Origin: Squalus acanthias
Lineage: Eukaryota
Assembly: GCA_030390025.1 (NCBI GenBank)
Contig: CM059449.1
Span: 14,942,001-15,006,000 of the forward strand
Direction: 5' to 3'
Length of the DNA stretch: 64,000 nt
Part shown: piece by piece, positions 6,401-63,194 of the stretch
How positions within the stretch are numbered: position 1 is the first letter of the stretch
How the letters are laid out: the number at the start of each line of letters is the position of its first letter
The notes under the pieces: generated by a model
Seen by the model: only the letters and a program-made list of their open reading frames with translations
The model's database searches: none
What the model was told of the DNA's origin: nothing
Position numbers and translations under genes: made by a program

Positions 6401-9400
6401 AATGCATCCACTATTTCCATGGCAACCTCTTTTAGTACTCTGGGATGCAGCTTATCAGGCCCTGGGGATTTATCAGCTTTCAGTCCCATTAATTTCTGCA
6501 GCACTATTTTTTTTAACTAAAACTAATTTCCTTTAATTCCTCCTTCTCACTAGACCCTTGGTTTCCTCGCATTTCTGGGAAGTTATTTGTGTCCTCTTCC
6601 GTGAAGACAGAACCAAAGTATCTGTTTAATTGCTCATCCATTTCCTTGTTCCCCATTATAAATTCTCCCGTTTCTGGCTGTAAGGGACAAAAGCAGCTCA
6701 GCTAGTCCCACTCCCCCGCCCTTTCCCCTTAGCCCTGCAATTTTTTTTCCTTCAGGCACTTATCCAATTCCCTTTTGAAAGCTTGATTGGCGCTCCATCC
6801 ACCACCTCAAACATTCACTCCCTCCACCACCGGCGTACTGTGGCTGCAGTGTGCACCATCTACAAGATGCACTGCAGCAACTCGCCAAGGCTTCTTCGGC
6901 AGTACCTCCCGAACCAACGTCCTCAGCAGCCCCATGGGAACAGCACCACCTCCAAGTTCCCCTCCAAGTTACACACCATCCTGACTTGGAAGTGTATCGC
7001 CATTCCTTCATTGTCGCTGGGTGAAAATCCTGTAACACCCTCCCTAACAGCACTGTGGCCGTATCTACACCACACGGACTGCAGGGGTTCAAGAAGGTGG
7101 CTCACCACCACCTTCGCAAGGGCAATTAGGGATGGGCAATAAATGCTGGCCTTGCCAGCAAAGCCCACATCCCATAAATGAATTAAAAAAAATCTGCCTC
7201 CACCATCCTTTCAGGCAGTACATTCCAGATCATAACAACTCGCTGCGTAAAAATGTTTTCCTCATGTCGCCTTTGGTTCTTCTGCCAATCAATTTAAATC
7301 TTTGTCCTCTGGTTCTCGACCCTTCCGCCAATGGGAACAGTTTCTATCTATCTACTCTGTCTAGACCCCTCATGATTTTGAAAAACTCTATCAAATCTCC
7401 TCTCAACCTTCTCTGCTCTAAGAAGAACAACCCCAGCTTCTCCAGTGTATTCACGTAACTGAAGTCCCTCATCCCTGGAACCATTCTTGTAAATCTGAAT
7501 TTAGAGTTCATTTGTCCTGGTAATTTATTAATTATTGTAAAGGTTTAGTGATGTCAATAACACACAGGGGCGGGTATGCCCCAGGGCCTGCGCCATCGGC
7601 CAGAACTTGCGTGCTATCAAACCAAATGGTGGTAAAACCAAAGATACTGAAATGGCAGAGGATTTGGAGGTTAATTGTCCACACCTACTGGCTGGGGTGG
7701 AACCCGATGCGGAATATTAATGGAATGTTTTTAGAACAATATTAAACAGGTGGAAGTCAGGTAAGTGCCCAAAGTCATAAAAAAGGGAGTGTGGTAAGAG
7801 AAAAACAAGATGGCTGCCTGGTCAAGTACAAAGGCAAATAAGACGTAAGTAAAAATGTGTTTTTGAATATAAATTAAAGGCACCTAATGCACAACAAGAC
7901 AAAGGCAGGTACCGGGACCAGGGTAGAAAAGCCATTAAAACAGCTAAACGATTAATGGAAAAGCGGATGGTGGACAACTGTAGTAGTCGTGGAAAATGTC
8001 ATTCATCTATGTGAAGAGTCAAAGGATCGTCAAAGACTATATTGGGCTTCTGAAAGATTCACAAGAACAGGTTAGAAAGGTCTCTCAGGGTCCGGCGGAG
8101 ATACTAAATTAATACTTTGCACCAGTCTTCACTCAGACACGGCTAAATGGCGTTGTTAGCAATAACGTTGTTAATATTGATACCGTTTTAGACTGCAATG
8201 GAACTGAATATCGGGCGCTGCATATAACGGGCGGCCGATCCGATACCGCCCGTTTTGCGCCACAATCTGAGATGGATTTCTCGGCCAATGAAACAGAATA
8301 TCAGGTGCTGATGGCCGATTTGATACCGCCCGCTTTGCGTTGCCGCCCAAGATGAATTTCTAGCAACGCGTTTCCCATATTTCTGTTTTTATTTCAGATT
8401 TTTATCATTGAAGGTTTTTTTTAAAGTCAGATATTTTCTATTTTATAGCAGGACAAACGTTTGGAAACATCACAGTGATCCAAAGCCCAGCCTCGATTAT
8501 TACAACTGAAGGCGAGACTGTGGTCCTAAACTGCACGTATAATGGGCCAACCGGGATAGCCGCATACAAATGGTATCGAAACATCCAAGGTGGGACTGAA
8601 GTGTCCAACAAAACATCACAGTACACAGGACGTGTGATTCTGGCGGATCAGGAGGCCTTCTTAGCAAGCAAAGACGCTTCACTACAAATAGCAGACACAA
8701 AGCTGTACGATTCAGGAACCTATTATTGCAAAGTGGAACACGTGGCATGTGGGGAAGCATATGGCCCGGGGACAAAACTTACTGTAACAAGTGAGTATCG
8801 CTCCCTAGTTTTGGCGAAACAATTTGTAAGTGTGAAAGTGACCCCGATCATAATGAAATGCATGATTACACCCAGGTCTTTTTAATTGGAAATAGCTTTG
8901 TGATTTTTAAATAGAAAAGAAAAAGAAAGACTTGCATTTATATAGCGCTTTCCACGACCACCGACGTCCAAAGCGCTTTACAGCCAATGAAGTACTTTTT
9001 TTTGAAGCGGAGTCACTGTTGTATTGTAGGAAACGCGGCAGCCAATTTGCGCACAGCAAGCTCCCACAAACAGCAATGTGATAATGATCAGGTAATCTGT
9101 TTTAGTGATGTTGATTGAGGGATAAATATTGGCCCAGGACACCAGGGAGAACGCCCCTGCTCTTCTTTGAAATAGTGCTATTGGATCTTCTATGTCCACC
9201 TGAGAGAGCAGACGGGGTCCTCGGTTTAACATCGCATCCGAAAGACGGTACCTCCGACAGTGCAGCGCTCCCTCAGTACTCCACTGAAGTGTCAGCCTAG
9301 ATTTTTGTGCTGAAGTCTCTGGAGTGAGAATATGAATCCACAATTTTCTGACTCAGAGGTGAGGGTGCTACCAACTGAGCCACTGGCTGACCTAAAATGC

Positions 9401-12400
9401 TAAAACTATTTGTTACACCAACACCTACAGTGCAGAAGCGTCCCAACATCGGACTGAGGAAGATGGAAGACGGGATGAATTAAGCAGTATTGAAGGACTA
9501 CTTCCAAGCTTGGGCTTTAACAGTCTGTCGATTGTAGGGGAAAATGGACTGGATGGAGTGAGCAGTTCCTCATTTGTAACGTCTTGCATAGGAATGAGGT
9601 GGATTAGGGCACTATGGATGGAGATTTGATTTCAACGCAGTTACACTGGAGGGAAGAGCCATAGCTGATAGGCAGACGTGCTTGGAGCTTAGAAGAAAGA
9701 AGGAGAAAGTTAATCACCATGGCAGTCGAGATAAATATAAAATAAAGTTGGAAAGTAGAGAGAGGTGTTAGAGGCCATTGTGGGGATGGGGTTGGTGAAG
9801 AATGGCGTATCTGACGACAAGCTTCTTGCATGTTAAATTGTTCATCTGCAGAAAGAAATGTGCCAGTAAAGCGGCGGACAGGGAACCGCAGAGGAAATCC
9901 ACATTAGTGATGATACCATGCAGACATGCGGCGCAGGGTCCGGATCACTTTGCAGATTGACAAGGGATTACCAAGAAAAAGGAATATTACAATTACCTTG
10001 AGTTAAAACATAGATCATGGGAACCGGTGAACTAGAGCAATGTTAGGAAGCAAACGAGAGTTAGAAAAAGCGCGAGACTTGCAAGCAGCGACAGTTAACT
10101 AAATAAGTACTTTATTGGCTTAGAGAAAGAACTGAGCTAAAAATAGCGTTTATATAACCTCATGACGTTGATCAGAAACGGCTCAAAGCGCCTCACGCCC
10201 GATGAGTTACTTAGAAGTGCAGTGGTTGCTGTGACGTAGGGACACCCTGCAGCCAATCTGCGCACAGCAAAAAAAAACCCCGAACTGCGATGAGATGGGA
10301 CTTTTGCCATTAGCTGAGGAAGGCTAGGAACCTCCTTCTAATCGAGCAGTGCTACAAACAGGCAGTGAATCAAGGCAATGCCCCTAGTGTAGGGCCTTCA
10401 TGTTCAATGTCTCATCCCAAGGATACCACCTGCGACAGTGCACCTCGCCTTGATTACCACATGCCAGTGTAAACCCACATAATATCCTTCCGTTCCGATG
10501 TTTTGGCCCAAACATTCATGACTCGGAGGCAAGCTGACAAATAGAACAACTGACAAATGGACAGCAATGCGATTTCTGGGGAATGAACAAAGAAAATAGC
10601 TCTTTCAAGTCTTCAAGTTAAATTAATTATACGAACTTCATTAACGTTTTTTCAAACAGTGCGAGTTCGATATTCACCAAATCACAGAAATGACAGAGAA
10701 GCATGGCTTGTAGAAGTACAAAGAATAATTATTTTTTTCAAATCTCCTCAGCTCGAGGATACGCCACGAGGAACTCGCGGATTCTTTGGTACATCAGAAC
10801 GTGGATAATCGTTGCACTCATCCTTACGGGGATCGTCCTCTCTCAGCGCATCTGCCCCATCAGAGGTACTGACATTGAAGTTAAATTTACAGCATTTCAC
10901 ATACATAAAAGATGAAATCATAGAATTGCACTTGCAATGCGCACATCCTCATTTTATATATAAGTATTGATTACAGAAGTAGATGCTTTCAGAATATCAA
11001 ACTATGCCTTAAATTCAGTTTAATCTTTTTTTTCTCTCTTTCTACTGTCAGTTCATTGCACATTTGGCCCACTTCCAGAGTCAAGGTTGGTAAATGGAAA
11101 CATTACCGATTTTAAGTGAAGTCTATTTCATCCCTCAAACACTTGCAAGTGATTAATTTATCTTCTTCTGGTTTTTCCCCCGGAAGGGTCGAGTCCATCT
11201 ACGAAGACATTGATTTTACTGGTGGGTGACCAATCCTCAGGTCAAGTTTGCTTCCTTTAGCTTTCGTTAAAGTTACTACATTTTGCTTCGTTACACCAGG
11301 AACGTCTCCTTGATTTATTGTTCCCTTCAATGTTTTTGTATCTGTTACTAAACGCTAATTATATACAGGAATAAGTTTGGAGTTGAGACACATTTTCGGG
11401 GAGGCGGCATTTCTCTGTATTTAATCCGCTGCATATCCGCCCTCTGAATAATTGATGGGTCATTGCAGAGTGTTACTTTTTGCCTACCTATTCTACACCT
11501 GGCATGACAATATTTATAGGAACGTAGGAACAGAATGAGGCCATTCAGCCCCCCAGCCCATTCTGCCATTCAATTAGATCGTGGCTTATCTGTATCATAA
11601 CCCCATTTACCCGCCTTGGTTCCGTAACCCTTAATACCCTTACCCAACAATAATCTATCAATCTCAGTACTGACGTTTTCAATTGACCCCCCAGTCTCAG
11701 CAGCTTTTTGGGGGAGAGAGTTCCAGATTTCCACTATCGTTTGTGTGAAGAAGTGCTTCCTGACATCACCCCTGAACGGCCTAGCTCTAATTTTAAGGTT
11801 ATGCCCCCTTGTTCTGGACTCCACCACCAGAGGGAATAGTTTATCTCTATCTATCCTATCAAATACTTTAATAATCTTAAACACCTCGATGAAATCACCC
11901 CTTATTCTTCTATATTCAAGGGAATAGAAGCCTAGTCTAAGCAACCTGTCCTCATAATTTAACCCTTTTTGCGCCGGTATTATTCTGGTCAATCTGCGCT
12001 GCTCCCCCTCCAAGGCCGATATATCCTTCCTGAGGTGCGGTGCCCAGATCTGAATACAGTTCTCCTGATGGGGTCTAACCACAGCTCTGTACAGCCCAGA
12101 TTTTGTGCTCCAGTCTCTGGGATGGGAATTAAACCCACAACCTCCTGACTCAGAGGCGAGAGGGCTACCAACTGAGCCTTGGCTGAGACTGTGAGCAGAG
12201 ATATAGGTCTTTATGTATTGTCGTATGAGGAGAGATTGGGTCGACTAGGCCTGTATTCACTAGAGTTTAAAAGAATGAGAGGGGACCTAATTGAAACGTA
12301 TAACATTCTGACAGGGCTAGACAGACTGGATGCAGGGAGGATGTTTCCCCTGGCTGGGGGTCTAGAACGAGGGGTCACCGTCTCAGGATATGGGGTAGGA

Positions 12401-17100: not shown

Positions 17101-18527
17101 CCCAGCGTCCTGGCGCCGCCGGATATTCGACATTCTCCACAACCTCTCCCACCCCGGCGCCCGCGCATCCATCAAATTGGTAGCCAACCGCTTTGTCTGG
17201 CGCGGCCTTCGCAAGGATGTGCTTACTTGGGCCAACTCCTGCCTATCCTGTCAACGTGCCAAGGTACAGCAACACACGAAAGCACCCCTCGAGGAGTTTA
17301 CCGTCCCCTCGCGGAGATTCGACCACATCCACGTGGACATCGTCGGGCCCCTGCCGCCATCGCAAGGCCACACGCACTTGCTGACCATTGTTGACCGCAC
17401 CACACGCTGGCCTGAGGCAATTCCACTGACCTCTACCACCACCGCCGACATCGCCAGAGCCTTCGTCAGCACCTGGGTCGCACGGTTCGGCGTCCCCTCC
17501 GACATGACGTCGGACAGAGGTCCGCAATTTACCTCTGAACTCTGGACCGCCGTTGCACGCAATCTCGGGGTGACCATCCACCGCACCACAGCGTACCACC
17601 CCCAAGCCAACGGACTGTGTGAGCGGTTCCACAGATCCTTGAAGGCATCTCTTTGAGCCAGCCTCCAAGATGGTGCCTGGACTGACCGACTTCCGCGGGT
17701 CCTCCTTGGCCTGTGCACCGCGGTTAAAGAAGACCTCCACGCATCGGCAGCAGAGCTCGTGTACGGTCAGCCGCTGCGCGTACCCGGCGAGTTCCTGCCC
17801 ACCGCCACGACACCCTGGTCAGCCGACCAGAACGCCACAACTTCGCCTCACTGGCGCTGCAGTTCACCCCGGTGCCCATTGCCCGACACGGTGAATCCAT
17901 GTCACACGTCCCACTAAGCCTGCACCAGGCACGGTTTGTTTTCATCCGGCACGACGCCCACCGCGGACCCCTTCAACCCCCGTATGACGGGCCCTACAAG
18001 GTGCTACAGGCTGGGGACAAATTTTTCACCCTGCAAGTGGGCGACAGGACCGAAAAAGTGTCGGTGGACCGACTCAAGCCAGCACACTCGGAGCCCGGGG
18101 AGCAGGTCCCTGTAGCTCGTCCACCTCCACGCGGCCGACCTGCCCTCAAGCCGGTTCACCCGGCTGCTCCACGCCCGGCCGTCCCACGTCCACCGGCGTC
18201 CTACAAGAGCCGCTCCGGCCGGCCCATCAGACCGCCGCACCGTCTCGTCCACACCTCCTAAGCGGATTCTGGGGGGAGCTGTGTGGCGGATCGCCACCTA
18301 AAACGGGCATAATCCACTCTTCCATCTGTGGACAAATTTCCAGCCCCTTCCCTTTAAGGCAGAAGGGGGCGGGGCCTCAGGTTTTACCCAGAGAATTCTG
18401 GGAGTTTACCCAGTGAATTCTGGGAGCAGCTTTCTCAGACATTTTGTTTTGCCATGCAGTGAATAAAAGCTTCTTGTTTTCCACAAATGGATTCAGCCTC
18501 CATTCGTGTTTCGCGGCAGCCTCAACA
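14163..18527 (+). mobile_element. Full-length Ty3/Gypsy LTR retrotransposon, CsRn1/Kabuki/Boudicca lineage, copy A (inactivated)
   Basis: TG..CA 246-bp LTRs at 14163-14408 and 18282-18527 (5 mismatches by eye); TSD CCCT at 14159-62 and 18528-31; PBS TGGTGACCCCGACG at 14410 (tRNA-Trp); PPT at 18271-18281. gag has CYYHARFGARAQRCTPPC, followed by PR, RT, RH and IN (HHCC, DDE, GPY). Confidence 0.95.
14449..18261 (+). pseudogene. gag-pol of Gypsy copy A, disrupted
   Basis: Stops at 15364-66 and 15811-13, RT YLDD changed to *LDD, protease DTG changed to DTR, and several frameshifts. Confidence 0.9.
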
Positions 18528-29700: not shown

Positions 29701-32700
29701 CTCGCAGCTCAGTCTTGAACTAAGACTGTTACAGAGCCAGACTTAAAGAAGCCAGACATTGTCTGTGCGGTTCTGCTTGGCTGGAAACCAAGTGCAGCTA
29801 CTGGTATCCTCAGTGTGACTGCATTCTACATTCGTTAAACAATAAACTTTTCTTTTTCTTCATTCACGGGATGTGGGCATCGCTGGCAAGGCCCGCATTT
29901 ATTGCCCATCCATAATTGCCCTTGAGTGGCTTTCCAGGCCATTTCAGAGGGCAGTTAAGAGTCAACCACATTGCTCTGGGTCTGGAGTCAAATATAGGCC
30001 AGACCGGGTAAGCGCAGCAGATTTCCTTCCCTAAAGGACATCAGTGAACCAGATGGTTTTTTACGACAATCCGGTAGTTACATGCTCACCATTACTGATG
30101 CTGGCTTTTTATTCCAGATTTATTTAACTGAATTCAAATTCCCCAGCTGCCGTGGTGGGATTTAAACTCTTGTCCTCGGATAATTAGTCCAGGCCTCTGG
30201 ATTACCAGTCCAGTAACATTACCACTATGCTACCGTTCGCTCATTTTATGGAACCAGAGTGTAACCGTTGTGCTAAATAATTATAAAATAGTTTTACATG
30301 CGTCCCAAACAGTAAATAATACATGTATTGACATTCACTACCAGTACCTCTTCTGACGGAAGCAGATAGCGACGATGATTCCAAAAACGACCAGTAAAGC
30401 TATCACTGCAGCACGGACACACCATAGTGTCCGGACGTCGCTGAAGAAGCTTGTAGTCTCTTCGTTGCTCGTTATCTTAAATTCCGTTTCGGCACCTATG
30501 GAATAACAGGTCTAAAAAATCTCCATATCGCTTTCTGGACCAAGGCAACGAGTAAGGCAAGGGGGCTGAGACGCCTTCCGGGCTGGATGTTCGTCTTCAC
30601 CAGCCTGGGCGGTAAACTGGCAGGGCACACCTCTCGCACTTTAAATAACCCGTCTACTTTTCATTCAATTAATTACCGCCCAGGCGGTAAAAGCGAAAAT
30701 CTGTCCCATTTATTTTATTACCACAGGTCACTTTTTCACAAGAGTACTCAAATATGAAGACTTCTTTCTTGGTGCCTTGTTTATTGTCCCACTCTTTGCA
30801 GTTTCCTCTTCCCTTCACCCCTTCCCGCTGTCTCTCACGAACACTACCCATACATCAGAGATAGACAGAAACATCTGCGCCAGTACCTGTTCAGATTAAC
30901 AACGGACAAAGTAAAGGCAATTGCACAACTTCATATCAGTCACCTATGGTGGAAAATAAACAACCTTATGTTTGCAGATGATGTGATCTACGCATCGAGC
31001 GAGATTATTGGGTGCAATTCTGGCACTACACTTTAGAAGTTGCGCCAGGGTCTTGGAGCGGATGCAGAGGAGATTTATTAGAAATGTACCAGGAATTAGG
31101 CTATTTCGGTTATCAGGAGAGACTTGAGAAGCTGGGATTAGATCAGAGCAGATAAGGTTCTGGGTAGATTTAATAGAGGTGTTCAAAATTATTTAAAGGT
31201 TTTGATAGAAAAGATAGGGAGGATCTATTTCCAATGGCAGGAGGGTTGGTAACCAGAGGACACAGATTTAAGGTAATTGACAAAAAAGCCAGGCATGAGA
31301 TTGGGAGCATTTTTTGTTATGATGTGGAATGCACTGAGTGAAAGGGCGATGGAAGCAGATTCAATAGTAACTTTCAAAAGGGAGTTTGATAAATACTTAA
31401 AAATAAAGCTTTGGGCTGTTTATAATAACCAGGCTAAGACTCGTGCTCAGCAATCTCACCAACAACGCGGTCAGGGTTCGCAGGTTAATGCCGCCAAGAG
31501 AAGCTTCTAGACTATAAATGTTCAGTATCAAACTTACCCCGTTTCACGGTCACTGTTGTCCCGGGTCCGTCTGCTGCAGCGAATCCCACGAGCTGCACTT
31601 TGCAGAAATAGAACCCGGTATCTTCCGGTTTCAGCTGGATTATTCTAATGGACGCGTCTCTCCTCTGTCTGAAATCCTCTTCACTTGCACCGAACACCCT
31701 GCCTCTGTATTCCGCTGTATTGTTGGAAACTTCATTTCCCTGTTTGGTGCCTCGGTGCCACGTGTAGCTGCCGATTCCTGTGGGACCCTCATATCTGCAG
31801 AGCAGGTCCGCTGTCTGTCCCGCGGTTTTGGTGAGTGATAGCGGGCTCTGAATTACGGTGATGTTTCCAACAGTAACTGCTGTAGATGGGTGAAGTCAAT
31901 ACAATACACAGTGGGGTGAGATCTTTTGCCCTGGAAAGTACTGCTTCCTATATTAGGCATGAATGCTCAGCCTTTAAAGGAGTCCTTAACCCTTTAAAAA
32001 TTATCAGTATTGTTACAGTTGAGCGAGGCGTGCGCGCCGCCACTCTGCCGAATGGCAATTTTCAGGATACATTGTTCAAATATATTCAGAAAAAAATCGG
32101 ATATTAATGCAGTGACATTGACTGTATATAGCCCGTGTTGTTAGTTGGTGCAATAAAACATAGCACTAAAGGGAGTTAAAAAAGCCTGTGACGAGAAAAT
32201 GTCCCTCAACCCATCAAAGATCAACACTAACTCCCACCACGGCATTTAATTGTATTTTGAGTAGCCCTAATATTTACCTCAATTGCTCGCTGTATACATT
32301 CCTCCAAGTTTTAGACAAACACGTTGTTCTTGCTTTTAGTTTAAAATGTCATTTTTCGCTAATTTCCATTGATGGATCTGATTCTACTTTCATGGCTTCG
32401 AAGGAATAATTGGGGCGCACTTTATCTATACCATTTATGATGGAGTTCTCCCCCCCCCCCCCCCACCCCCGCGCCCCGCCGCTCCCGGCACTTAACTGCC
32501 TTATTTAAGATTGAAACACTTACGCTTCGCTTATCTTTTCTCACGTCTCATCTCTTTACACTTCGGAAGGGTTTTGCTGCTCCTCTATGCACTCTTTCCA
32601 GTCCAGATATATTTTTGTGTCATCGATAGGAAAGCTGAAGTTCGGATTCTAAGAATGGTTGACCCGTGCATTTAGAAGCTTAGCTCAGTTCTCTGACACT

Positions 32701-43343: not shown

Positions 43344-46300
43344 TGTTGTGGCTGCCGCGAAACACAAATTAAGGCCGAGTCCATGTGTGGAACACAAAGC
43401 TTTTAATTACATCTGCCTGGTAAAATGGCTGCTAACCAACTGAACTGAAAACTCTGAGGCCACGCCCACTCCTTTTCTCCTGCCTTAAAGGCAGCATGCC
43501 TTAAAGGCAAGGTGCCCGATTTATTGTCCACGGATGGAAAAGTGGATTGCGCCCGTTTAAGTGGCGATCCGCCACACAGCTCCCCCCAGAACCCGCTTAG
43601 GAGGTGTGGACGAGATGGTGCGGCCGTCTGATGGGCCGGCCGGAGCGGCTGTTGTAGGACGCCGGTGGACTTGGAACGGCCGGGCGTGGAGCAGCCGGGT
43701 GAACTGGCTTGAGGGCAGGTCGGCTGCGTGGTGGTGGACGAGCTACAGGGACCTGCTCACTGGGCTCCGACTGTGCTGGCTTGAGTTGGTCAACCGGCAC
43801 ATTTTCGGTCCTGTCGCCCACTTGCAGGGTGAAAAATTTGTCCCCAGCCTTTAGCACCTTGTAGGGCCAGTTGTACGGGGTTTGAAGGGGTCCGCGGTGG
43901 GCGTCGTGCCGGACGAAAATGAACCGTGCCTGGTGCAGGCTTAGTGGGACGTGTGAGGTGGATTCGCTCTTTGGGCAATGGGCACCGGGGCAAACTGTAG
44001 CGTCGGTGAGGCGAAGTCGTGGCGTTGCTGGTCGGCTGACCAGGGTGTCGTGGCGGTGGGCAAGAACTCGCCGGGTATGCGCAGCGGCTGACCGTACATG
44101 AGCTCTGCTGCCGATGTGTGGATGTCTTCTTTAACCGCGGTGCGCAGGCCGAGGAGGACCCATGGAAGTCGGTCAGTCCAGGCACCGTCCTGGAGACTGG
44201 CTCGAAGAGATGCCTTCAAGGATCTGTGGAACCGCTCACACAGTCCGTTGGCTTGGGGGTGGTACGCTGTGGTGCGGTGAATGGTCAACCAGAGTTTGCG
44301 TGCGACGGCGGTCCAGAGTTCACAGGTAAATTGCGGACGTCTGTCCGACGTCATGTCGGAGGGGACGCCGAACCGTGTGACCCAGGTGCTGACGAAGGCT
44401 CTGGCGATGTCGGCGGTGGTGGTAAAGGTCAGTGGAATTAACTCAGGCCAGCGTGTGGTGCGGTCAACGATCGTCAGCAAGTGCGTGTGGCCTTGCGACG
44501 GCGGCAGGGGACCGACGATGTCCACGTGGATGTGGTCGAATCTCCGCGAAGGGATGGTAAACTCCTCGAGGGGTGCTTTAGTGTGTTGCTGCACCTTGGC
44601 CCATTGGCAGGCTAGGCAGGAGTTGGCCCAATACGCACATCCTTGCGAAGGCCGCGCCAGACAAAGCAGTTGGCTACCAATTTGATGGATGCGCGGGCGC
44701 CGGGGTGGGAGAGGTTGTGGAGAATCTCGAATACCCGGCGGCACCAGGATGCTGGGACGACGGGCCGAGGTTGACATTGGGATAGGTTGCACTTGACATT
44801 GACTGCGGTCGGGCCACAGGCGACGTCGGCCAGGCGTAGCCCTGGTAGGTTGGTAGGTGCGGAGAGCAGATCAGGTTCGGTGATCTGGTCTGCTGCGAGT
44901 TGAGCGTAGTCGACTGCTAGGTGTGCGGCGTGGATGGCGGGGCGGGAGAGGCAGTCGGCTACCACATTGTCTCGGCCGGGGACGTGTTGGATGTCCGTGG
45001 TGAACTCGGACACTGCCGCGAGCTGGCGCTGCTGCCTGGCGGACCAGGGGTCGGTTGTCTTTGCCATTGCGAATGTCAGGGGCTTGTGGTCGACAAACGC
45101 CGTGAAGGGGTGGCCCTCCAGCAAAAAACGAAAATGGCGGACCGCCAGGAACAGCGCGAGGAGCTCACGGTCGAAGGTGCTGTACTTGACCTCCGGGGGG
45201 CGTAGTTGGTGGCTGGAGAAGGCAAGTGGCTGCCTGGCGCCGTCGACCCAGTGCTCATACATGGCGCCGACCGCGTGGTCGGGGGTGTCCGTGGTGAGTG
45301 CTACCCTGGCATTGGGCCGTGGGTGCGCGAGCAGGGTGGCGTTGGCGAGCGTGGTCTTGGTGGAGTCGAAGGCGGCTGACACATCTGCCGTTCATTCGAC
45401 TGCCATCTTGCCGCTCCTGCCCCGGAGGGCTTCATACAGGGGCCTCATGAGGGACGCCGCTTTGGGGATTAAGCGGTTGTAGAAATTCACCATCCCGAGG
45501 AACTCCTGGAAGCCTTTGATGGTGGTGCGGCGGGGAAATTGTTGGATGGCCTGCACCTTCGTGGGCAGGGGAATGGCCCCAGCATGGGTGATGTGGTGGC
45601 CGAGGAAGTCGATCTTGTCCAGGCCGAACTGGCATTTGGCTGGGCTGAGGATGAGCCCATGGTTGCTGAGGCGCCCGAACAGGATGCGAAGGTGTTCGAG
45701 GTGTTCCTGCTTGGAGGAACTGGCTACCAGGATGTCGTCCAGGTAGACGGACAGGGACTTCAGGTCCTGAAGGACCGAGTCCATGAGCCGTTGGAATGCC
45801 TGGGCCACGTTTTTGAGGCCGAAGGGCATCCGCAGGAAATCGAAAAGGCCGAAAGGGGTGATTACGGCCGTCTTGGGGACGTCCGTGGGGTGGACGGGGA
45901 CTTGGTGGTAGCGGCGCACCAGGTCGACCTTGGAAAAGACTGAGCGGCCGGCCAGTCTAGCCGAGAAGTCCTGGATGTGCGGCACGGGGTACCGATCATG
46001 GGTGGTGGCGTCACTGAGGCAGTGGTAATCCCTGCAGGGGCACCAACCCCCGCCTGGTTTGGGCGCGATGTGGAGTGGGGAGGCCCAGGGACTGTTGGAG
46101 TGGCGGATGATGCCGAGCTGTTCCATGGTGGCAAACTCAGTCCGCGCGATCTCCAGTTTGGCCGGGTCCAGCCTGCGGGCGTGGACATACACTGGGGGGC
46201 CTGTGGTGGGGATGAAGTGTTCCTCCCCGTGTTTGGTGGCCTCCGCGGAGAAGGTCGGATTGGTAAGGGCTGGGAATTCGGCCAGGAGTGCCGTGTAGTC

Positions 46301-47680
46301 ATCCGTGGCCTGGGCGTGGCACTGTGACGCCATGTCGGTGGGTTGACGGGGGGCCATGGCGCCCAGGATGGGGGACATGGTGTTCATGTCCACGAGGCGG
46401 TGTCGAGGGATGTCTACCAGTAGGCCGTGGGCGCACAGGAAATCCGCGCCGATGAGAGGGGAGAGCACCTTGGCAGTGATGAACTCCCATCGGTAGCGGT
46501 GACCAGCGAGGTCGAGGGTGACTGTGCGGGTGCCGTGCGTCCGGATGTCTGAGCCGTTAGCAGCAGCCAGCGCCGGTCCTCGTTTGCCCTTTTGGATGTC
46601 GAGGGAGGAGGCCGGGATGATGTTGTGCTGAGCTCCAGTGTCGCACAGGAACCGACGGCCGGTTTTGTCATCCATGACGTACAGCAGGGGGCCCGCGTGG
46701 CCCACGGCCATCGTGGGGGCTGGTACGGGGGCAGACTTGAAAGAGCAGGGAGGTGTGCAACATTGTGCCCTGGCGCCGAACCGTGCATGGTAGTAAAAGT
46801 GGCCCGGGTTAGTGGGGCGCGAAGGCCCCGTGAGCCCGGTGGCTGGGCCTTGTGGCCACGTGGTGGCCGGTGAGGGGCACGCCCAGGCAGTAGCTGCCAG
46901 GTCCGGAGTGACGTCGCGGCTGGAGTGAGCGGACAGCAGCTTGTCGACCTCATTGGCCAGGGCTTCCAGGTCCGTGAGGCCGGACACCACAATCGCTGGG
47001 CAGATGCTGAGAGGTAGCTGGCGGATGAACAGCGTGCGGAAGAGGGATCCGGGTGGGGTCTCGTCGGTGAGGGAGAGCATGTGGGAGAGGAGGTCTGACA
47101 GTGAGGCATCACCAAGGCCTGGAAGGTCGAGGAGGTGGTAGTTTCGCTGGTATGTCGAGGCCGTAAATTTTTTAAGGAGCGCAGCCTTTAGATGTGCATA
47201 CTTGTCCCCCTCTGGTGGGTTCTGCAGCACTGTCCAGACCTTCGTAACTGTGGAGCTACCGAGTGATGTGACGAGGTAGTCGTACTTCGTCCCATCTGTG
47301 GTGATTTGTTGCAGCCGGAATCGGGACTCAGCTTGGAGAAACCAGGCTTCGGGCTGGTTTTCCCAAAACTCTGGCAGTTTCACGGAAACTGCATTTGTGT
47401 CCGCCATTGCAGTGCTCGGAATACGTTCTGAGCGTCGGGGTCACCAATGTTGTGGTTGCCGCGAAACACGAATTAAGGCCGAGTCCATGTGTGGAACACA
47501 AAGCTTTTAATTACATCTGCCTGGTAAAATGGCTGCTAACCAACTGATCTGAAAACTCTGAGGCCACACTCACTCCTTTTCTCCTGCCTTAAAGGCAGCA
47601 TGCCTTAAAGGCAAGGTGCCCGATTTATTGTCCATGGACGGAAAAGTGGATTGCGCCCGTTTAGGTGGCGATCCAACACA
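43344..47680 (-). mobile_element. Full-length CsRn1-lineage Gypsy element, copy B (inactivated)
   Basis: 233-bp LTRs at 47448-47680 and 43344-43576 (about 10 mismatches); TSD GTAT at 43340-43 and 47681-84; tRNA-Trp PBS at 47433-47446; PPT at 43577-43587. Confidence 0.95.
43597..47407 (-). pseudogene. gag-pol of Gypsy copy B
   Basis: Single gag-PR-RT frame of 671 aa (DTG, YLDD) ends at a TGG-to-TGA stop at 45392-94; later frameshifts in IN. Confidence 0.9.
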
Positions 47681-56117: not shown

Positions 56118-59100
56118 CACACCGTTAAAATCTACGGAGCCAACCATATCTATAATATCTGAAAACAAAGAGAACATTTGGAAGTGAACAATTGGCTGTG
56201 GGGCGTGGTTACATGCCGGTTCTAGGAAGCAACCTTTCAGGAAATCGAAAATATGGCTCGGGACGAAGAGTAAAATTATCGCACAAAATTTAATGGCAGC
56301 ATGAAAACATTCACTGTGCATAATGTTTATAGCCACACGCATGTAGACTGGTTACACAGCAAATCCGACCGTTAATATAGCGAACAGGAAAAGTACCTTA
56401 TTTTTTCATTCGAAAGGAGACATAAGAACCTGAGAAGATAAGAAATAGGAGCAGGAGTCGGCCATTTGGCCCTTCGAGCCTGCTCCGCCATTCAATAAGA
56501 TCATGGCTGATCTTCTACCGCATCTCCACTTTCCTGCACTATCCCCATATCCCTTGATTCCCTTAATATTCAAAAATCTATCGATCTCTGCCTTGAATAT
56601 ACTCAACGACTGAGCCTCCACAGCCCTCTGGGGTAGAGAATTCCAAAGATTCACCACCCTCTGAGTGAAGAAATTTCTCCTCAACTCAGTATTAAATGGC
56701 TGACCCCTTATTCTGAGACTGTGACCACTGGTTCTAGACTCCCCAGCCAGGGGAAACATCCTCCCTGCATCTACCCTGTCAAGCCCCGTAAGAATTTGTA
56801 TGTTTCGATGAGATCACCTCTCATTCTTCTCAACTCTAGAAAATATAGGCCTAGTCTACTCAATCTGTCCTCATAGGGCAATCCCCCCATCCCAGGGACC
56901 AGTCTGGTGAACCTTCGTTGCACTCCCTCTATGGCGAGTATATCCTTGAGTATTGCGTGCAGTTTTGGTCGCCTTATCTGAGGAAGGATGTTCTTGCCGT
57001 GGAGGGAGTGCAGCGAGGATTCACCAGACTGATACCTGGGATGGCAGGAATGACATATGAAGAGAGATTGGGACGATTGGGCTTGTATTCTCGAGAGTTT
57101 AGAAGAATGAGAGGGGATCTCATTGAAACTTATAAAATTCTAAAAGGGCTAGACAGACTAGATGCAGGAAGGATGTTCCCGATGGCGGGGGAGTCCAGAA
57201 CCAGGGGTCAGAGTCTAAGGATAAGGGGTAATCCATTTTGGACTGAGATGAGGAGGAATTTCTTCACCCAGAGAGTGGTGAACCTCTGGAATTCTCTACC
57301 ACAGAAGGCAGTTGAGGCCAATTCATTAAATATATTCAAGAAGGAGTTAGATATATTTCTTAAGGCTAAAGGGATCAAGGGATATGGGGAGAAAGCAGGG
57401 ACAGGGTACTGAATTTGGATGATCAGCCATGATCGCATTGAATGGCGGAGCAGGCTCGAGGGGCCGAATGGCCTACTCCTGCTCCTATCTTCTATGTTTC
57501 TATGTCTATGTTTCTATCCTTCCTTAGGTAAGGAGACCAAAACTGTACATAATACTCCAGGTGTGGTCTCACCAGGGCCCAATATAATTGCTGTAAGACG
57601 TCTTTACTCTTGTACTCAAATCCTCTTGTAATAAAGGCCAACCTACCATTTGCTTTCCCAATTGCTTGCTGGACCTGCTAGTTAACTTTCAGTGATTCTC
57701 ATACCAGAGACGGTACAAGAATAGAAGTACACTCTAATATATGCGAGTTTTTTTCACATTAATTATAGCCATAGGGTTATTGTTACTTATATTAAGGGAA
57801 TGGCCTTTATCGCGGTTTAATGCTAGCCGGAGTAATGAATGTCGCATAAATGAAAGGCTAATATAGACAATAGTAGCTTGTAAGTAAGACACTGTAACAA
57901 TCCTTACCATGCGGGGGGATGTCGGCATAGACCTCTTCATCACTGAACCACAAAGGGAGGAAGAAGCAAATCGTTACATGTTTAAAACACGCGGTACGTG
58001 TCACATGAAAATAAAGGCAGCAAAATGTCACAGTGATATCTACGCACCATTGCAAAGGTGGATCGAATTCTGTGGAAAGACAAAGAACAAACAAAGAATA
58101 TCTGTTATATCTGAGAACGTATTTAGCACAACTGCATTCTTAACTACGTCTCGGTTTTTATCATTTGTCAATAATAATTAATAAATGTTTATCTACGGGC
58201 AGTGGGAGTGGGAAGGGTGCACTGCAGTCGGCTCCCATTTCATGGTGCGAGCCAGTCTCATTGCAACGCTAACTGCCGGGTGAGGGTGCCCTTTATCCCT
58301 GTCTAGAAGGGCAATGTGTAAAGATAGTTTAGGACATCCAGCATCTAGCGGGCGTGGTTGAACTGAATATAATGAAGCATTAAACGGATGATGTGTAGCT
58401 GCCCCAACAAATCAAAAGCGCTGTCATACTGATCCAATAAAAGGTATTCTTTAGAGATTTTGGCTAAAGTATAGCGTTAGTACGGTGCTGTACCTGAATG
58501 GCACTCCAGCAGTGCTCGCTGCTGATACCGTGGGTAATTTTAACCTAAGGCCGGGCGGGATCGGGCGGAAGTCCGGTTTTACATATTACCCTCCACTGAC
58601 TTCACTGGAGAGTAAAATCGAGCTGTGTGTAATGCTGGCGTTGCACCCGGTCTCTTAAATTTCCCGACGTCCGTGTTCGGTTAAAATTGCCCCGTGTCCA
58701 ACAACACAAGGTGAAGAATATTACATCTCCAACAAGCGAGAATCTAACCACCGCCCCTTGACGTTCAATGGCATTACCAGCGCCGAATCCCCCACCATCA
58801 ACATCCTGGGGGTTCAGCATTGACAAGAAACTTAACTGGACCAGCTATATAAATACTGTGGCTACAAGAGCAGGTCAGAGGTTGGGTATTCTGTGACGAG
58901 TATCTCATCGCCTGACTCCCCAAAGCCTTTCCACTATCTGTAAGGCACAAGTCAGGAGTGTGATGGAATACTCTCCACTTGCCTGGATGAGTGCAGCCCC
59001 AGCAACACTCAAGAAGCTCGACACCATCCAAGACAAATTAGCCTGCTTGATTGGCACCCCATCCCCATCTTAAACATTCACTCCCTCCACCACTGGCGTA

Positions 59101-62100
59101 CCGTGGCTGCAGTGTGCACCATCTACAAGATGCACTGCAGCAACTCGCCAAGGATTCTTCGGCAACACTTCCCAAACCCGTGACCTTTTCCACCTAGAAG
59201 GACAAGGGCAACAGGCGCATGGGAACACCATCACCTGCAAGTTCCCCTCCAAGTCACACACCATCCTGACTTGGAAATATAACGCCGTTCCTTCATCGTC
59301 CCTGGGTCAAAATCCAGGAACTCCCTTCCTAAAGCACTGTGGGAGTAACATTCATCACACGGACTGCAGCGGTTCAAGAAGGCGGCTCGCCACCACCTTC
59401 TCAAGGGCAATTAGGGATGGGCAATAAATGCTGGTTTTGCCATGTACGCCCACATCCCAAGAACAAATATTTTAAAATATTAGCAAACAGCAAGCTACTG
59501 AGTTTGTTCCTTGGCAATTCGCACAAGTATAATACCGAAGCCTCGTTGAATCTTGTTAAATGATTCTTTAATCGGTGGTGCTCACCATCCACGTTAGATT
59601 CATCATAGATCGGCTCATTCCTTCGGGAGAACAAACAAAGAAGAGAAAATGAGTGTTACTGCAGAGTTACAGAGCAATTAGAATAAAAGATGCAGGAAAC
59701 GTTAACTCTGAGATTTACCGACCTTCCAAGTGGTGGAGGAACATCTGCAAAAGTAAAAGTTCACCATGAAAGCTTTGTAACGTTAATGCAATCCGTCTGA
59801 AAACAGTTCGACTACAAGAAACTGTTTCCACTGGCGGGAGGGTCGGTAACCAGAGGACACAGATTTAAGATCATTGGCAAAAGTGCGAGAGGGGAGTTAA
59901 GGAGAATTTTTTATGCAGTGAGTTGTTATGGTACGGAAAGCACGACCTGAAAAGATGGTGGAAGCAGATCCCCCGCCCCCCAGATGTTTTCTCCCGATCC
60001 CCCCTTTCCCCCAGGCTCCCGCCCGATGTTCTCTCCCTTCTCCTCTGATGCTCCGGTTCCGATATTCTCTCCCTGTCCCCCCGTCCGCAACCCCCACCCA
60101 AGGCTCCTGCCCCGATCTTCTCTCCCTCACCTCCTCGATGCTCCGGCCCCGATGCTTCCCTCCCTCCCTCCTGCCCAATCCTCCTCCGGCCCCCGACAAC
60201 CCAACCTCACCTCCGGCCCGCACCTGATCCCTCCCCACCTCACAGCTCCCAGCCAGCCTCTCCACCCTGCACCCAACCAGGCTCCCGATTAAAAATCCGG
60301 CCATGGTAGCACCCAATCACCAGCCCGAGTCAGACCAGTTAGTTCGGCATATCTCACGGATCCAACCATGGGATCTCTCTGGCACTGGTGACTCAGGAGT
60401 ACACCAGGCAGTGCATCTAGGCTCTGAAGCAACCGGTCCATTGAGGAGCAGGTTAACTGCTCTGCAGGTGCGCCACTCACCAGCTGGATTAATTTCATCA
60501 TAGGCGGAACCAGCGATGTCCATCCAGGGTCTGGGAAAGAGAAAAACAAACAATCACATAGCTGAAACAAAAATCCAGCTGATTAAAAAAATGCTTCACC
60601 CTCATAACCACCAACCAACCTTTGTGCTTGCGGAGCTAACTCTGTGGGAATAAAAGTCGAAAATTAAGGTCTATCCTTTGATGCAAACAAGACATTTGAT
60701 ACAGTGAAATGAGATTAAAATTATATGTGCCTCTTATGTCCATCCAGCAATAATAATCAGCGAAACTACTGAAGTCCTTTACCAACAATAATTGCTAATT
60801 TGAACTTTTTTTTTAAAGGACTATTTAAAAAATCGACCAGTTATATACATATAACTAATACTTACCATTAGAAAGAATGTTACTGCAAGGCGCAATATTG
60901 CTTTGGGATCAAAACGGAAAAGGGAAAAAGATGTCAGTGGATTGAATATCTAAATGCACATCAATTAAATAGAGATATAAAGAGAAGAGTGATCTGCACT
61001 TCAATATTCACTGACCGTTGTAACCGTGCAGGTTCGAGACCTGCGGGAATAAAAGGTGATGGAGAAAGTGTTACAACTTTACTACGGGCGGACGGTAGCA
61101 TCGTGGTTATAAGAACATAAGAAATAGGAGCAGGAGTAGGCCATTCGGCCCTTCAAGCCTGCTCCGCCATTCAGTAAGATCATGGCTGATCTTCTCCCTC
61201 ATCTCCATCTCCCAGCACTATCCACATATCCCTTGATTCCCTTAGAATCCAAAAATCTATCGATCTCTGTCTTGAATATACTCAATGACTGAGCCTCCAC
61301 AGCCCTCTGGGGTAGAGAATTCCAAGATTCACCACCCTCTGAGTGAAGAAATTTCTCCTCACCGCAGGCCTAAATGGCTGACCCCTTATTCTGAGACTGT
61401 AACCCTTAGCTCTAGACTCGCCAGCCAGGGGGAAACATCCCTCAGCATCGACCCTGTTATGTTACTAGACTAGTAATCCAGAGGCCTGGGCTAATGATCC
61501 GAATACATGGGCTCAAATCCCAGCACTGGCAGCTGGGGAATTTAAATTCAAATAATTAAATAAATCTGGAATAAAAAGCTATTATCAGTAATGGTGACCA
61601 TGAAACTACCGGATTGTCATAAAAATCCATCTGGTTCACTAATGTCTGGCCTATATGAGCCATAGCAATGTGGTTGACTCTGAAATGGCCTAGCAAGCCA
61701 CCACCAAGGTGGCTCACCACCACCTCCTCGAGGGCAATTAGGGATGGGCAATGAATGAATAAAAAATAAATAAACTTTCCTTATTTGAAAGAACAGCATC
61801 CCCAACCACAATCCGGTCAAGATCAGCTGACGGTTTCAACTGAACGAGACCAGTATCGTTTATGTAATAAACCGACTCAATCCCTAACCATCTGAAAATG
61901 TCTGGTATTAAATATAATCATTTAATATCATTTTCTGTGCCTGAACTACAAGCAGCCCACGAATGTAAAAATAAGAGCCTAAAAATTGCCATTAATAACT
62001 TTTACTGAGGGACACCTGCCGCATTATGGAATGTGGAATAGTTCGGATTATACTTTAACAATGTAAATTGAACAATTTGTTCATCCATTAGTAATGCGGA

Positions 62101-62848
62101 AAGATAAATATCACACTAACCCACCAAAGGTACATTTCCCACTGGCATTTCATAGCCTATTCAAGCAAAACGTGTTCAGAGTGGTAAAACCGAGCGATTT
62201 GAACGAGTCACTTACGATCTAAAGGGATGCCTTCATAAAATCGATTATTCATTCTAAATCTCAAAGAAAAAAGGCGCATTATCGAACAGTACACACATGT
62301 TATATACGTCAATTTTGGAAAAAAGTTTTTTGTGGGTAGGGGGGGTGGAGATTTACCAACCTCTGAAATTGTAGGCGGCGAACTGTAGGAATCAAAAGTA
62401 ACAATAAAAGTAACAATTTGAATATAAACATCACTAAAAAGAACCAAGATTATCTGGCCATTATCACATTGTTGTTTGTGGGATCTTGCAGTGCGCAAAT
62501 TGGCTACCGCGTTTCCTGCATCACAACAGTGACTACACTTCAAAAAAGCACTTCATTGACTGTAAAGCGTTCTGAGGGCGTGAAAGGCGCTGTGTGAATG
62601 CAAGACTTTCTTTACAACAACATCAAAGGCGAACCAAATGTCACTGGCGTTTGAATGCATGCATCTACTTTATGGTTATATTCGGAAGCGCAATATTGCT
62701 CTTTCAAATAGTTACCTTTTGTCAGACCATAACCTGCGGAGAACAGGAGGAAAGCGACTAAAACTCCGGCAGCGGTGTACAACAAGCTGTTGCTTAGCGA
62801 CGATTCGCTGGTTGGCTCTGTGGTCGGTTGTACTGGGAGCCGGCCGAG
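56118..62848 (-). CDS. Gene 3 (partial): type I membrane receptor, uncharged TM and multi-tyrosine tail encoded by micro-exon pairs; probable NCR3-family paralog
   Basis: TM 62848(or 62832)-62716 (...SLLYTAAGVLVAFLLFSAGYGLTK), then 62382-62361, 62253-62216, 61040-61016, 60900-60866, 60641-60620, 60530-60481, 59744-59723, 59620-59586, 58069-58048, 57942-57908 and probably 56158-56118. All are GT-AG and splice into one open frame. Ectodomain lies outside the window; 3' end unresolved. Confidence 0.8.
56421..57700 (-). mobile_element. CR1 3' fragment with an opposite-strand CR1 nested at 56946-57515
   Basis: ORFs 56406-56759 (-) and 56918-57412 (+). Confidence 0.87.
58532..58692. mobile_element. 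PIF/Harbinger-like MITE
   Basis: 14-bp TIRs GGGTAATTTTAACC / GGTTAAAATTGCCC (1 mismatch); CGT on both flanks (3-bp TSD candidate). Confidence 0.6.
58722..59478 (+). mobile_element. Crack/L2-group LINE 3' fragment
   Basis: Same family as 39790-40595. Confidence 0.85.
59970..60300. repeat. C-rich low-complexity tract with ccgat-containing imperfect repeats
   Basis: Directly visible; lies in a gene 3 intron. Confidence 0.6.
61085..61772 (+). mobile_element. tRNA-headed SINE split by a CR1 tail (61110-61455, -)
   Basis: SINE reads gtggttat|gttatgttactagac with GTTAT duplicated at the junction. Confidence 0.75.
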
Positions 62849-63194
62849 CTGAAGACAAAATAAGAGATTAGTTTCACCCAGAACATCACTTACTGACTCC
62901 CGCTCTCCACTGCTGGTGAATGTACAGCGTGCCCCGACACCAGCCAATAGGTAATGCTATTTCAATGGGTGATGAGAACTACAGGTGCAGCGGTGCTGAT
63001 TTTTTCCATCTCCCCTCCATTTGCTAATTGGGCTTGTGATATTTGTTATTTATATTTTTGAATTTAACAGCTAATGCTTTTTTTCAAATTGATACAAAAT
63101 CAATTGTTATCGAAAATATATCGTGACAAAACACCTAACGATTATAATCTCGTCATTGAATTATCTGTTCTCAATATTCTATGGAAGAGGGGTT

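What the first reader, a model, noticed from the sequence alone, without database searches (positions are those of the whole stretch)
57908..62382. Receptor signalling tail built from five tandem micro-exon pairs (a modular phosphotyrosine cassette array)
Seen: after an uncharged TM, ten tiny minus-strand exons alternate strictly. A-type exons are 22, 25, 22, 22 and 22 nt (phase 1 to 2). B-type exons are 38, 35, 50, 35 and 35 nt (phase 2 to 1). The A-B introns are all 89-115 nt (107, 115, 89, 102, 105), while inter-pair introns vary from 224 to 1516 nt and most carry TEs. The spliced tail reads VRRLQFQR-MNNRFYEGIPLD / RLEPARLQR-NIAPCSNILSN / ELAPQAQR-PWMDIAGSAYDEINPA / DVPPPLGR-NEPIYDESNVD / EFDPPLQC-DEEVYADIPPH. 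Established: ITAM tyrosines are about 10-12 aa apart, so this ~19-24 aa periodicity is not an ITAM. pYDE-type sites are Nck-SH2 ligands, pYExI resembles Src-family SH2 sites, and SAYDEI fits the permissive ITIM consensus. Inference: a two-exon unit duplicated five times. Any A can join any downstream B in frame, so splicing could combinatorially set the number and type of docking sites. I know of no such tail in NKp30-family receptors, and the ORF track misses it.
Basis: partly seen in the sequence, partly recalled or inferred. Interest (0 to 1): 0.88.

Follow-up and report, generated by a model that had tools for sequence, protein, structure and literature searches.

The report
Five-unit micro-exon tyrosine tail
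A shark-type immune receptor gene appears to encode its inner signalling tail from ten tiny exons made by copying one two-exon tyrosine unit five times, an unusual gene layout whose use in RNA is still unproven.

Summary
After a transmembrane (TM) exon at 62848-62716 (minus strand) lie ten micro-exons with exactly the stated sizes, phases, AG/GT borders and intron lengths. One such pair is common by chance. The five pairs, however, are far more alike than chance pairs in exon A, exon B, acceptor tracts and intron starts, while intron interiors are near background. They are therefore old tandem copies of one two-exon unit that stayed open and splice-competent.

A neighbouring plus-strand gene has a V domain that best matches NKp30 structures. 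It carries a single copy of the same unit, with the same donor motif and SIYEDI.

DNA contigs of related organisms, about 95% identical, cover all eleven exons collinearly.

No RNA run was available, so splicing, the 3' end and pair-skipping are untested. The ectodomain of this gene lies outside the window.

The tail is not an ITAM, and only one unit fits the ITIM consensus. The closest precedents are the PECAM-1 multi-exon tail and the chicken BG 21-nt exon tails.

First-stage notes report similar 22/35-nt ladders elsewhere in this genome; these notes are unchecked.

Verdict: a new variant of a known kind.

The parts
62716..62848 (-). TM exon, 133 nt, phase 0 to 1. It encodes an S/T/P-rich stalk, an uncharged hydrophobic segment and then a Lys. 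An alternative acceptor at 62832 would give a phase 1-1 exon.
   Evidence: read by eye for the alternative acceptor
62361..62382 (-). A1, 22 nt, phase 1 to 2; donor AG|GTTGGTAAAT
62216..62253 (-). B1, 38 nt, phase 2 to 1; carries FYEGI
61016..61040 (-). A2, 25 nt
60866..60900 (-). B2, 35 nt; Cys in place of Tyr (CSNI)
60620..60641 (-). A3, 22 nt
60481..60530 (-). B3, 50 nt; SAYDEI, the only unit that fits the ITIM consensus
59723..59744 (-). A4, 22 nt; donor AG|GTCGGTAAAT
59586..59620 (-). B4, 35 nt; IYDES (Ser at +3)
58048..58069 (-). A5, 22 nt
57908..57942 (-). B5, 35 nt; DEEVYADI. Its GTAAGG donor may or may not be used. Read-through adds 16 residues and then a stop.
57816..57821 (-). ATTAAA, a candidate poly(A) signal if B5 is the last exon (inference only)
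8475..8789 (+). Comparator: V exon of the neighbouring NKp30-like gene
10752..10865 (+). Comparator: TM exon of that gene, 114 nt, phase 1-1. It ends in G, as the TM exon of the finding does.
11052..11085 (+). Comparator: A-like exon, 34 nt. It starts with TT and has the donor AG|GTTGGTAAAT.
11187..11221 (+). Comparator: B-like exon, 35 nt, SIYEDI, 101 nt after the A-like exon

Best explanation
These are the real cytoplasmic exons of a single-pass receptor gene in a cluster of NKp30-like V-domain genes of a cartilaginous fish. The ancestral tail had one unit made of two micro-exons: an A exon (about 22 nt, ...P..LQR) and a B exon (about 35 nt, ....Y..I...), separated by an intron of about 100 nt. 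In this gene the unit was tandemly duplicated to five copies, giving about 102 residues with four tyrosines 19-24 residues apart, three of them in YxxI. The tail most likely works as an unstructured docking strip. After receptor engagement a Src-type kinase would phosphorylate the tyrosines, which sit among acidic residues. SH2 proteins would then bind them. One site (SAYDEI) is ITIM-like, so at least part of the output would be inhibitory, and the uncharged TM argues against pairing with an ITAM adaptor.

Shown here: the exon anatomy, the homology of the units, the single-unit relative next door, and the presence of the array in related organisms.

Inferred: transcription, the exact splicing, phosphorylation, the binding partners and the sign of the signal.
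For: - All 11 exons have AG/GT borders and one continuous frame.
- The units are alike in exons, acceptor tracts and the first 14 intron bases (0.45-0.57 identity; at most 1 of 5000 random sets of chance pairs reaches these values). Intron interiors are at 0.28-0.30 (alignment). The copies are therefore old, yet all ten micro-exons stayed open and splice-competent.
- Tyr/Cys sits at a fixed position, the 7th codon from the end of B, in 5 of 5 units.
- The plus-strand neighbour has a V exon whose best solved relatives are NKp30/NCR3 (four of the top five hits, E 6.5e-13 to 9.8e-13). It also has a TM exon ending in G, an A-like exon starting with TT and carrying the identical donor AGGTTGGTAAAT, a 101-nt intron and a 35-nt B exon with SIYEDI. 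That donor motif occurs 3 times in the window, always at A-type exons, against 0.54 expected.
- The exons are single copy, not transposon-derived (table 2).
- Contigs of related organisms cover all 11 exons collinearly at roughly 93-95% identity (table 8). In pair 5 the listed differences leave Tyr, Ile, PPLQ and the splice dinucleotides unchanged.
Against: - There is no RNA evidence at all. No listed run is on record as RNA. The two runs guessed to be RNA cover only repeats, apart from depths of 1.77 and 1.45 in two bins of X4.
- The TM exon alone found no relative among 1.84 billion representatives. The neighbour's V exon found none in the 5.8-billion-protein search. No annotated model therefore supports the splicing.
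- Between species, the pair-5 exons carry more listed differences (6 in 57 nt, 5 of them changing the residue) than the surrounding DNA (25 in 729 nt; Fisher p 0.02). That gives no sign of purifying selection there. Only 31 of 40 differences were listed, and the places of the indels are unknown.
- B2 has lost its Tyr and B4 its +3 Ile.
- The ectodomain and the start of the gene are outside the window. Just upstream of the TM exon lies only a short J-strand-like open piece without a V body.
- The 3' end is unknown.
- Ten consecutive exons of 50 nt or less are hard to splice: the abstract of PMC4317164 says 94% of mammalian coding exons exceed 51 nt (listing).
Confidence: 0.55

Rival explanations
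1. The array is real but no longer used. Gene X would be a decapitated or silent member of a birth-and-death receptor cluster, and the tail exons are drifting.
For: - There is no V body upstream within the window, only stops and a transposon.
- B2 has lost Tyr and B4 has lost Ile.
- Pair 5 changes faster than its introns between related organisms.
- No RNA holder was found.
Against: - All 20 splice dinucleotides of the ten micro-exons and all ten frames are intact, although the copies have diverged to about 45% identity.
- Only 1.1 kb lies upstream in the window, so the absence of a V exon there says little.
- The relatives keep the whole array collinear.
Confidence: 0.2
2. One reading: the pairs are cassettes, and regulated skipping sets the number and kind of docking sites per isoform.
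For: - Every pair is a multiple of 3 nt, and all A exons are phase 1-2 while all B exons are phase 2-1.
- PECAM-1 tails are alternatively spliced in this way (passages read in PMC2132561).
- The A5-B5 intron is open in frame.
Against: - There are no transcript data.
- Frame compatibility follows automatically from duplication of an in-frame unit, so it is not evidence of use.
- All acceptor tracts look equally strong.
Confidence: 0.15
3. The YxxI motifs serve sorting (YxxPhi signals for clathrin adaptors) rather than SH2 docking.
For: YEGI, YDEI and YADI all fit YxxPhi (the motif rule is recalled from knowledge, not from a call).
Against: - Five repeated units are not needed for sorting.
- The neighbour's SIYEDI and this gene's SAYDEI fit the ITIM consensus quoted in PMC3022915.
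- The acidic context of the tyrosines resembles kinase substrates (recalled from knowledge).
Confidence: 0.08
4. Chance alignment of splice-like sites in non-coding DNA.
For: Single open pairs are common: 188 in the window and a mean of 146 in simulations.
Against: The mutual similarity of the five units, their order, the fixed Tyr position, the strong tracts and the homologous unit in the neighbouring gene.
Confidence: 0.02

Closest known systems
PECAM-1 (CD31) cytoplasmic domain, exons 10-16
   Same: The tail of an Ig-superfamily receptor is split over many short exons. Isoforms arise by skipping tail exons. One 19-residue exon (exon 14) carries a functional tyrosine. (Abstract and passages of PMC2132561 read.) A 22+35-nt unit here also encodes 19 residues.
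   Different: In what I read, the PECAM-1 exons are not described as tandem copies of one unit, and each motif sits in one exon. Here a two-exon unit is repeated five times, with all exons 50 nt or less. No homology was tested.
Chicken BG genes (butyrophilin relatives in the MHC)
   Same: These genes have a single V-like domain, a TM exon, and then a tail encoded by a long array of tandemly repeated micro-exons: 13 to 36 exons of 21 or 24 nt. They form an expanding and contracting multigene family. (Passages of PMC4046983 read.)
   Different: BG has one exon type that encodes heptads of a coiled coil. Its ITIMs arise only from retained introns. Here two exon types alternate strictly, the unit is 57-72 nt, it is proline- and tyrosine-bearing, and there is no heptad pattern.
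Classical ITAM modules (CD3, CD79, FcR gamma, TCR zeta)
   Same: A tyrosine module is encoded by two exons. An added exon created a second ITAM in Xenopus laevis FcR gamma. (Passages of PMC4536121 read.) B1's YEGI..LD and the neighbour's YEDI resemble the two halves of the CD79 ITAM; the CD79 motifs are recalled, not taken from a call.
   Different: The ITAM exon border splits the first tyrosine module and the two tyrosines are about 11 residues apart. Here YxxI lies wholly inside exon B and the tyrosines are 19-24 residues apart.
FcR-like, XFL and NILT inhibitory tails
   Same: The TM is uncharged, the tail exons are separate from the TM exon, and there are one to five tail exons with one to several YxxL/I/V motifs. 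They sit in paired-receptor clusters with charged-TM partners. (Passages of PMC2413239 and PMC3022915 read.)
   Different: No alternating micro-exon pairs are described there. NILT ITIM exons are said to be in phase 0, whereas the B exons here start in phase 2.

Membership tests
Classical ITAM | Two YxxL/I motifs separated by about 7 residues | tested here: not met
   Successive Tyr/Cys positions are 20, 24, 19 and 19 residues apart. The consensus is quoted in PMC4536121.
Classical ITAM | [quoted passage not shown] | tested here: not met
   YxxI occupies codons -7 to -4 of exon B, so it lies wholly inside one exon. The rule is read in PMC4536121.
ITIM-bearing inhibitory receptor | (S/I/V/L)xYxx(I/V/L) in the tail | tested here: inconclusive
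   One of 5 units fits (B3, SAYDEI). B1 and B5 have YxxI without the -2 residue, B4 has Ser at +3, and B2 has no Tyr. The neighbour's unit fits (SIYEDI).
ITIM-bearing inhibitory receptor | ITIM exon in phase 0 (as stated in PMC3022915) | tested here: not met
   All B exons start in phase 2 and end in phase 1. The passage was read.
ITIM-bearing inhibitory receptor | Uncharged TM and a long tail | tested here: met
   There is no charged residue in the 21-residue hydrophobic segment, and the tail is about 102 residues.
NKp30 (NCR3) family | V domain with a joined J-like strand, related to NKp30 | not testable with these tools
   The ectodomain exon of this gene is not in the window. The neighbours at 8475-8789 (+) and 31856-31545 (-) meet it.
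NKp30 (NCR3) family | Arg in the TM for pairing with an ITAM adaptor (recalled for human NKp30) | tested here: not met
   The TM is uncharged. The minus-strand neighbour has Arg in its TM-like exon candidate.
NKp30-like cluster of this genome (local family) | TM exon ending in G, an A exon starting with TT and ending AG|GTYGGTAAAT, an intron of about 100 nt, and a 35-nt B exon with Y..I | tested here: met
Chicken BG-type tail | Array of 21/24-nt exons encoding heptads | tested here: not met
   The exon sizes are 22/25 and 35/38/50 nt in alternation. The BG rule was read.
PECAM-1-type alternatively spliced tail | Isoforms that lack single tail exons | not testable with these tools
   No RNA run was available.

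The most novel reading that the evidence does not exclude
The 22-nt/35-nt exon pair is a mobile building block of cartilaginous-fish immune receptors. It is present once in some NKp30-like genes and five times here, and according to unchecked first-stage notes it occurs in other ladders of the same genome. Its copy number is changed by unequal crossing-over. Its inclusion per transcript is set by splicing of pairs that are each recognised as one unit of 160-190 nt across the short inner intron. Receptors would thus tune the number and kind of phosphotyrosine sites both over evolution and from cell to cell.
Probability: 0.2. Interest if true: 0.7.

Novelty: new variant of a known kind. Interest (0 to 1): 0.5.

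Why it matters
If the array is transcribed as predicted, about 100 residues of signalling tail are hidden in ten exons of 22-50 nt, which ORF-based and many gene-model methods miss. Receptors of such clusters would then be wrongly classed as tail-less or activating. The array also gives a clean case of how tyrosine-motif tails grow by duplication of a phase-balanced exon unit, in the oldest vertebrate lineage with NKp30-like genes. It offers a testable system for micro-exon recognition outside the nervous system. It does not change known signalling principles.

Tried and rejected
- Expression. The look-up of sequencing runs listed 8 runs, none on record as RNA. Read laying on 4 of those 8 (X1, X4, X6, X7) showed that X1 and X4 lie only on repeats. 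The exceptions are depths of 1.77 (bin 58048-58221) and 1.45 (bin 60658-60831) in X4, which no listed piece explains. X6 and X7 are DNA of relatives. No joint in the listed rows matches a predicted splice, and all listed joints lie in repeats; 1563 joints were not shown.
- Protein relatives. The TM exon alone (44 aa) against 1.84 billion representatives gave 0 hits at E up to 0.001. The neighbour's V exon in the word-indexed search gave 3 candidates, none scoring. Pfam on the open frame through the TM exon matched 0 families.
- DNA homology. blastn between the neighbour gene and this gene found only a shared SINE-like repeat and the 12-nt donor.
- Other copies in the window. The refined A pattern gave one extra minus-strand hit at 25287. 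On inspection it has no TM or B exon nearby and was rejected. Three plus-strand hits lie in transposon ORFs.
- Next exon after B5. The candidates at 56158 (41 nt) and 55351 have no relative elsewhere in the window. The 3' end is left open.
- V-exon remnant upstream. The J-like piece at 62956-62894 was considered as a V-exon remnant. There is no V body upstream, and the 45-nt gap to the TM exon is too short for a usual intron. This is unresolved.
- Literature. Six searches found no paper that describes a tail of alternating micro-exon pairs. In one search, 2 papers held 3 of the 4 terms, and neither held 'ITIM'. PMC4594805 is not held. Subscription papers on shark and Xenopus NKp30 could not be seen, and supplements were not opened, so 'not in print' holds for this library only.
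Full report
What is there

On the minus strand a 133-nt exon (62848-62716) encodes an S/T/P-rich stalk, a 21-residue uncharged hydrophobic segment and a Lys. Ten micro-exons follow it. All 11 exons have AG before and GT after. The ten exons sum to 306 nt, or 102 codons. Tyr (Cys in B2) is always the 7th codon from the end of B, and Ile stands at +3 in 4 of 5 units (Ser in B4).

Is it more than chance?

A single open 'AG-22/25-GT, 80-125 nt, AG-35/38/50-GT' pair is common. There are 188 in the window on both strands, against a mean of 146 in 20 Markov simulations. The case therefore rests on other features.

- The five pairs are mutually similar. Mean pairwise identity is 0.455 in exon A, 0.508 in intron bases 3-14, 0.451 in exon B and 0.572 in the A acceptor tract. 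Chance pairs give about 0.25, and 0, 0, 1 and 0 of 5000 random sets of five chance pairs reach the observed values.
- Intron interiors are at 0.28-0.30. This is an ungapped measure. The MAFFT alignment also shows little identity there.
- None of the 182 chance pairs has both pyrimidine tracts at or above 0.72. Four of the 5 real pairs do, and the fifth has 0.67.
- A pattern for A exons (AG, 22 or 25 nt, GTnnGT, a pyrimidine tract, open frame) finds the five A exons plus one other place on the minus strand, and three transposon places on the plus strand.

The units are therefore old tandem copies of one two-exon unit. Their exons and splice signals were kept while their introns randomised.

Repeats and copy number

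In two deep DNA runs the bins that hold exons and A-B introns have depth 16-39. Parts of three of the four inter-pair introns, and of the TM-A1 intron, reach 10^3 to 10^7 (table 2).

Family context

- The window holds a plus-strand V exon (8475-8789). It matches Pfam V-set at E 3.9e-14. Its best solved relatives are NKp30/NCR3, with four of the top five hits at E 6.5e-13 to 9.8e-13.
- That gene continues with a TM exon (10752-10865) that ends in G. Next comes an A-like exon (11052-11085, 34 nt) that starts with TT and ends at the donor AGGTTGGTAAAT. A 101-nt intron follows, and then a 35-nt B exon (11187-11221) encoding SIYEDI.
- The same donor motif, with one degenerate position and up to one mismatch, occurs three times in the window: at this exon, at A1 and at A4. 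The expectation is 0.54, and 2 of 100 shuffles reach 3.
- In both genes the TM/A junction codon is GTT (Val) and the A/B junction codon starts with AG (Arg).
- The neighbour therefore carries the unit once and the gene of the finding carries it five times. At the DNA level the two genes share nothing else except a SINE-like repeat, so the relation is old.
- A second NKp30-like V exon lies on the minus strand (31856-31545; 50% identity, E 5e-31). A TM-like exon candidate with an Arg in its hydrophobic stretch follows it. The cluster thus looks like a set of paired receptors.
- The ectodomain of the gene of the finding is not in the window. Upstream of the TM exon there is only a 63-nt open piece (62956-62894) with a J-strand-like GxGxxxTxT, then stops, and then a transposon. 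Its membership in the NKp30 family therefore rests on the shared TM-A-B architecture alone.

Expression

This is the weak point. Of the 4 runs laid (4 of the 8 listed), the two guessed to be RNA lie only on repeats. No listed joint corresponds to a predicted junction. Splicing, the 3' end and any pair-skipping are untested. B5 has a good donor (GTAAGG), but the next exon is unknown. The candidates at 56158 (41 nt) and 55351 have no support. Alternatively B5 is the last exon: read-through adds 16 residues and a stop, and an ATTAAA lies at 57821.

In practice only the TM exon (44 aa) is long enough for a protein search. It found nothing among 1.84 billion representatives. The neighbour's V exon found nothing in the word-indexed search. 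No annotated protein therefore confirms the junctions.

Relatives

Contigs of two related organisms (coded C and D) cover all eleven exons collinearly at roughly 93-95% identity (table 8). The five-pair array is thus older than that split. Differences were listed in full enough detail only for 57700-58485, where 31 of 40 were shown.

- The pair-5 exons carry 6 differences in 57 nt. Five change the residue (His to Gln, Ala to Thr, Asp to Ser through two adjacent changes, Phe to Ile) and one is silent.
- The other 729 nt carry 25 differences (Fisher p 0.02).
- Tyr, the +3 Ile, PPLQ and the splice dinucleotides are unchanged in the listed rows.

This shows no purifying selection on pair 5 as a whole. 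It fits either fast evolution of an immune gene or relaxed constraint.

How it most likely works

The tail is proline- and acid-rich and has no domain match. It is most simply read as an unstructured strip with four tyrosines: YEGI, YDEI, YDES and YADI. It is not an ITAM. The spacing is 19-24 residues rather than about 11, and the exon border does not split the first tyrosine module, which is the rule for classical ITAMs (passage in PMC4536121). Only B3 (SAYDEI) fits the ITIM consensus quoted in PMC3022915. The B exons are not in phase 0, as that paper says ITIM exons are. With an uncharged TM, the likeliest mode is direct recruitment of SH2 proteins after phosphorylation, at least partly inhibitory.

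Comparison with known systems

- PECAM-1 has a tail encoded by exons 10-16, alternatively spliced, with a 19-residue Tyr exon (abstract and passages of PMC2132561).
- Chicken BG genes have a V-like domain, a TM exon and 13-36 tandem exons of 21 or 24 nt (passages of PMC4046983).
- Xenopus FcR-like tails use one to five exons with one to three YxxL/I/V motifs (passages of PMC2413239).
- Xenopus laevis FcR gamma gained a second ITAM through an extra exon.

None of these shows two micro-exon types in strict alternation as a repeated unit. The six literature searches found no such description in the held library. Papers of subscription journals and supplements were not seen. Ten consecutive exons of 50 nt or less are unusual in themselves: the abstract of PMC4317164, seen in the listing, says that 94% of mammalian coding exons exceed 51 nt.

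Earlier notes of this scan

First-stage notes, unchecked, report ladders of 22-nt and about 35-nt micro-exons at two other places of the same sequence piece, and an 11-micro-exon tail at a third. If these are true, the unit is a family-wide building block. I could not read those places.

Verdict

The function as a phosphotyrosine docking tail is plausible but inferred. Combinatorial splicing is only arithmetically possible. This is a new variant of a known kind, of moderate interest, and it mainly awaits transcript data.

Noticed in passing
window 31545-31856 (-) and about 30495 downward (-): A second NKp30-like V exon (50% identical to the plus-strand one, E 5e-31). About 1 kb downstream lies a TM-like exon candidate with an Arg inside the hydrophobic stretch and a short basic tail. 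It is a possible activating partner in a paired-receptor cluster. It has no A-type donor motif.
   Followed up: partly
window 62894-62956 (-): A 63-nt open piece with a J-strand-like GxGxxxTxT. It ends at a GTAAGT donor in phase 0, only 45 nt before the TM exon, and the frame stays open through the gap. There is no V body upstream. It may be a relic of a V exon or part of a longer stalk exon.
   Followed up: partly
window 57943-58047 (-): The A5-B5 intron (105 nt) is open in frame, so its retention would add 35 residues without breaking the tail. The other four A read-throughs stop within 19-29 codons.
   Followed up: no
window 56118-56158 (-): A 41-nt open exon candidate with a strong acceptor and a GTATGT donor lies in phase after B5. 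A first-stage note on another locus of this genome mentions 41-nt micro-exons. No relative of it is in this window.
   Followed up: partly
window about 14400-18300 (+) and about 43500-47400 (-): Two inverted, GC-rich (0.58-0.62) copies of a retroelement with long gag/pol-like ORFs of up to 671 aa. The copy near 45392-47407 is the more intact.
   Followed up: no
window 11222-11230 (+): In the plus-strand NKp30-like gene, read-through of the B-exon donor reaches a stop after two codons. Its coding region may therefore end there, with a single SIYEDI unit.
   Followed up: no
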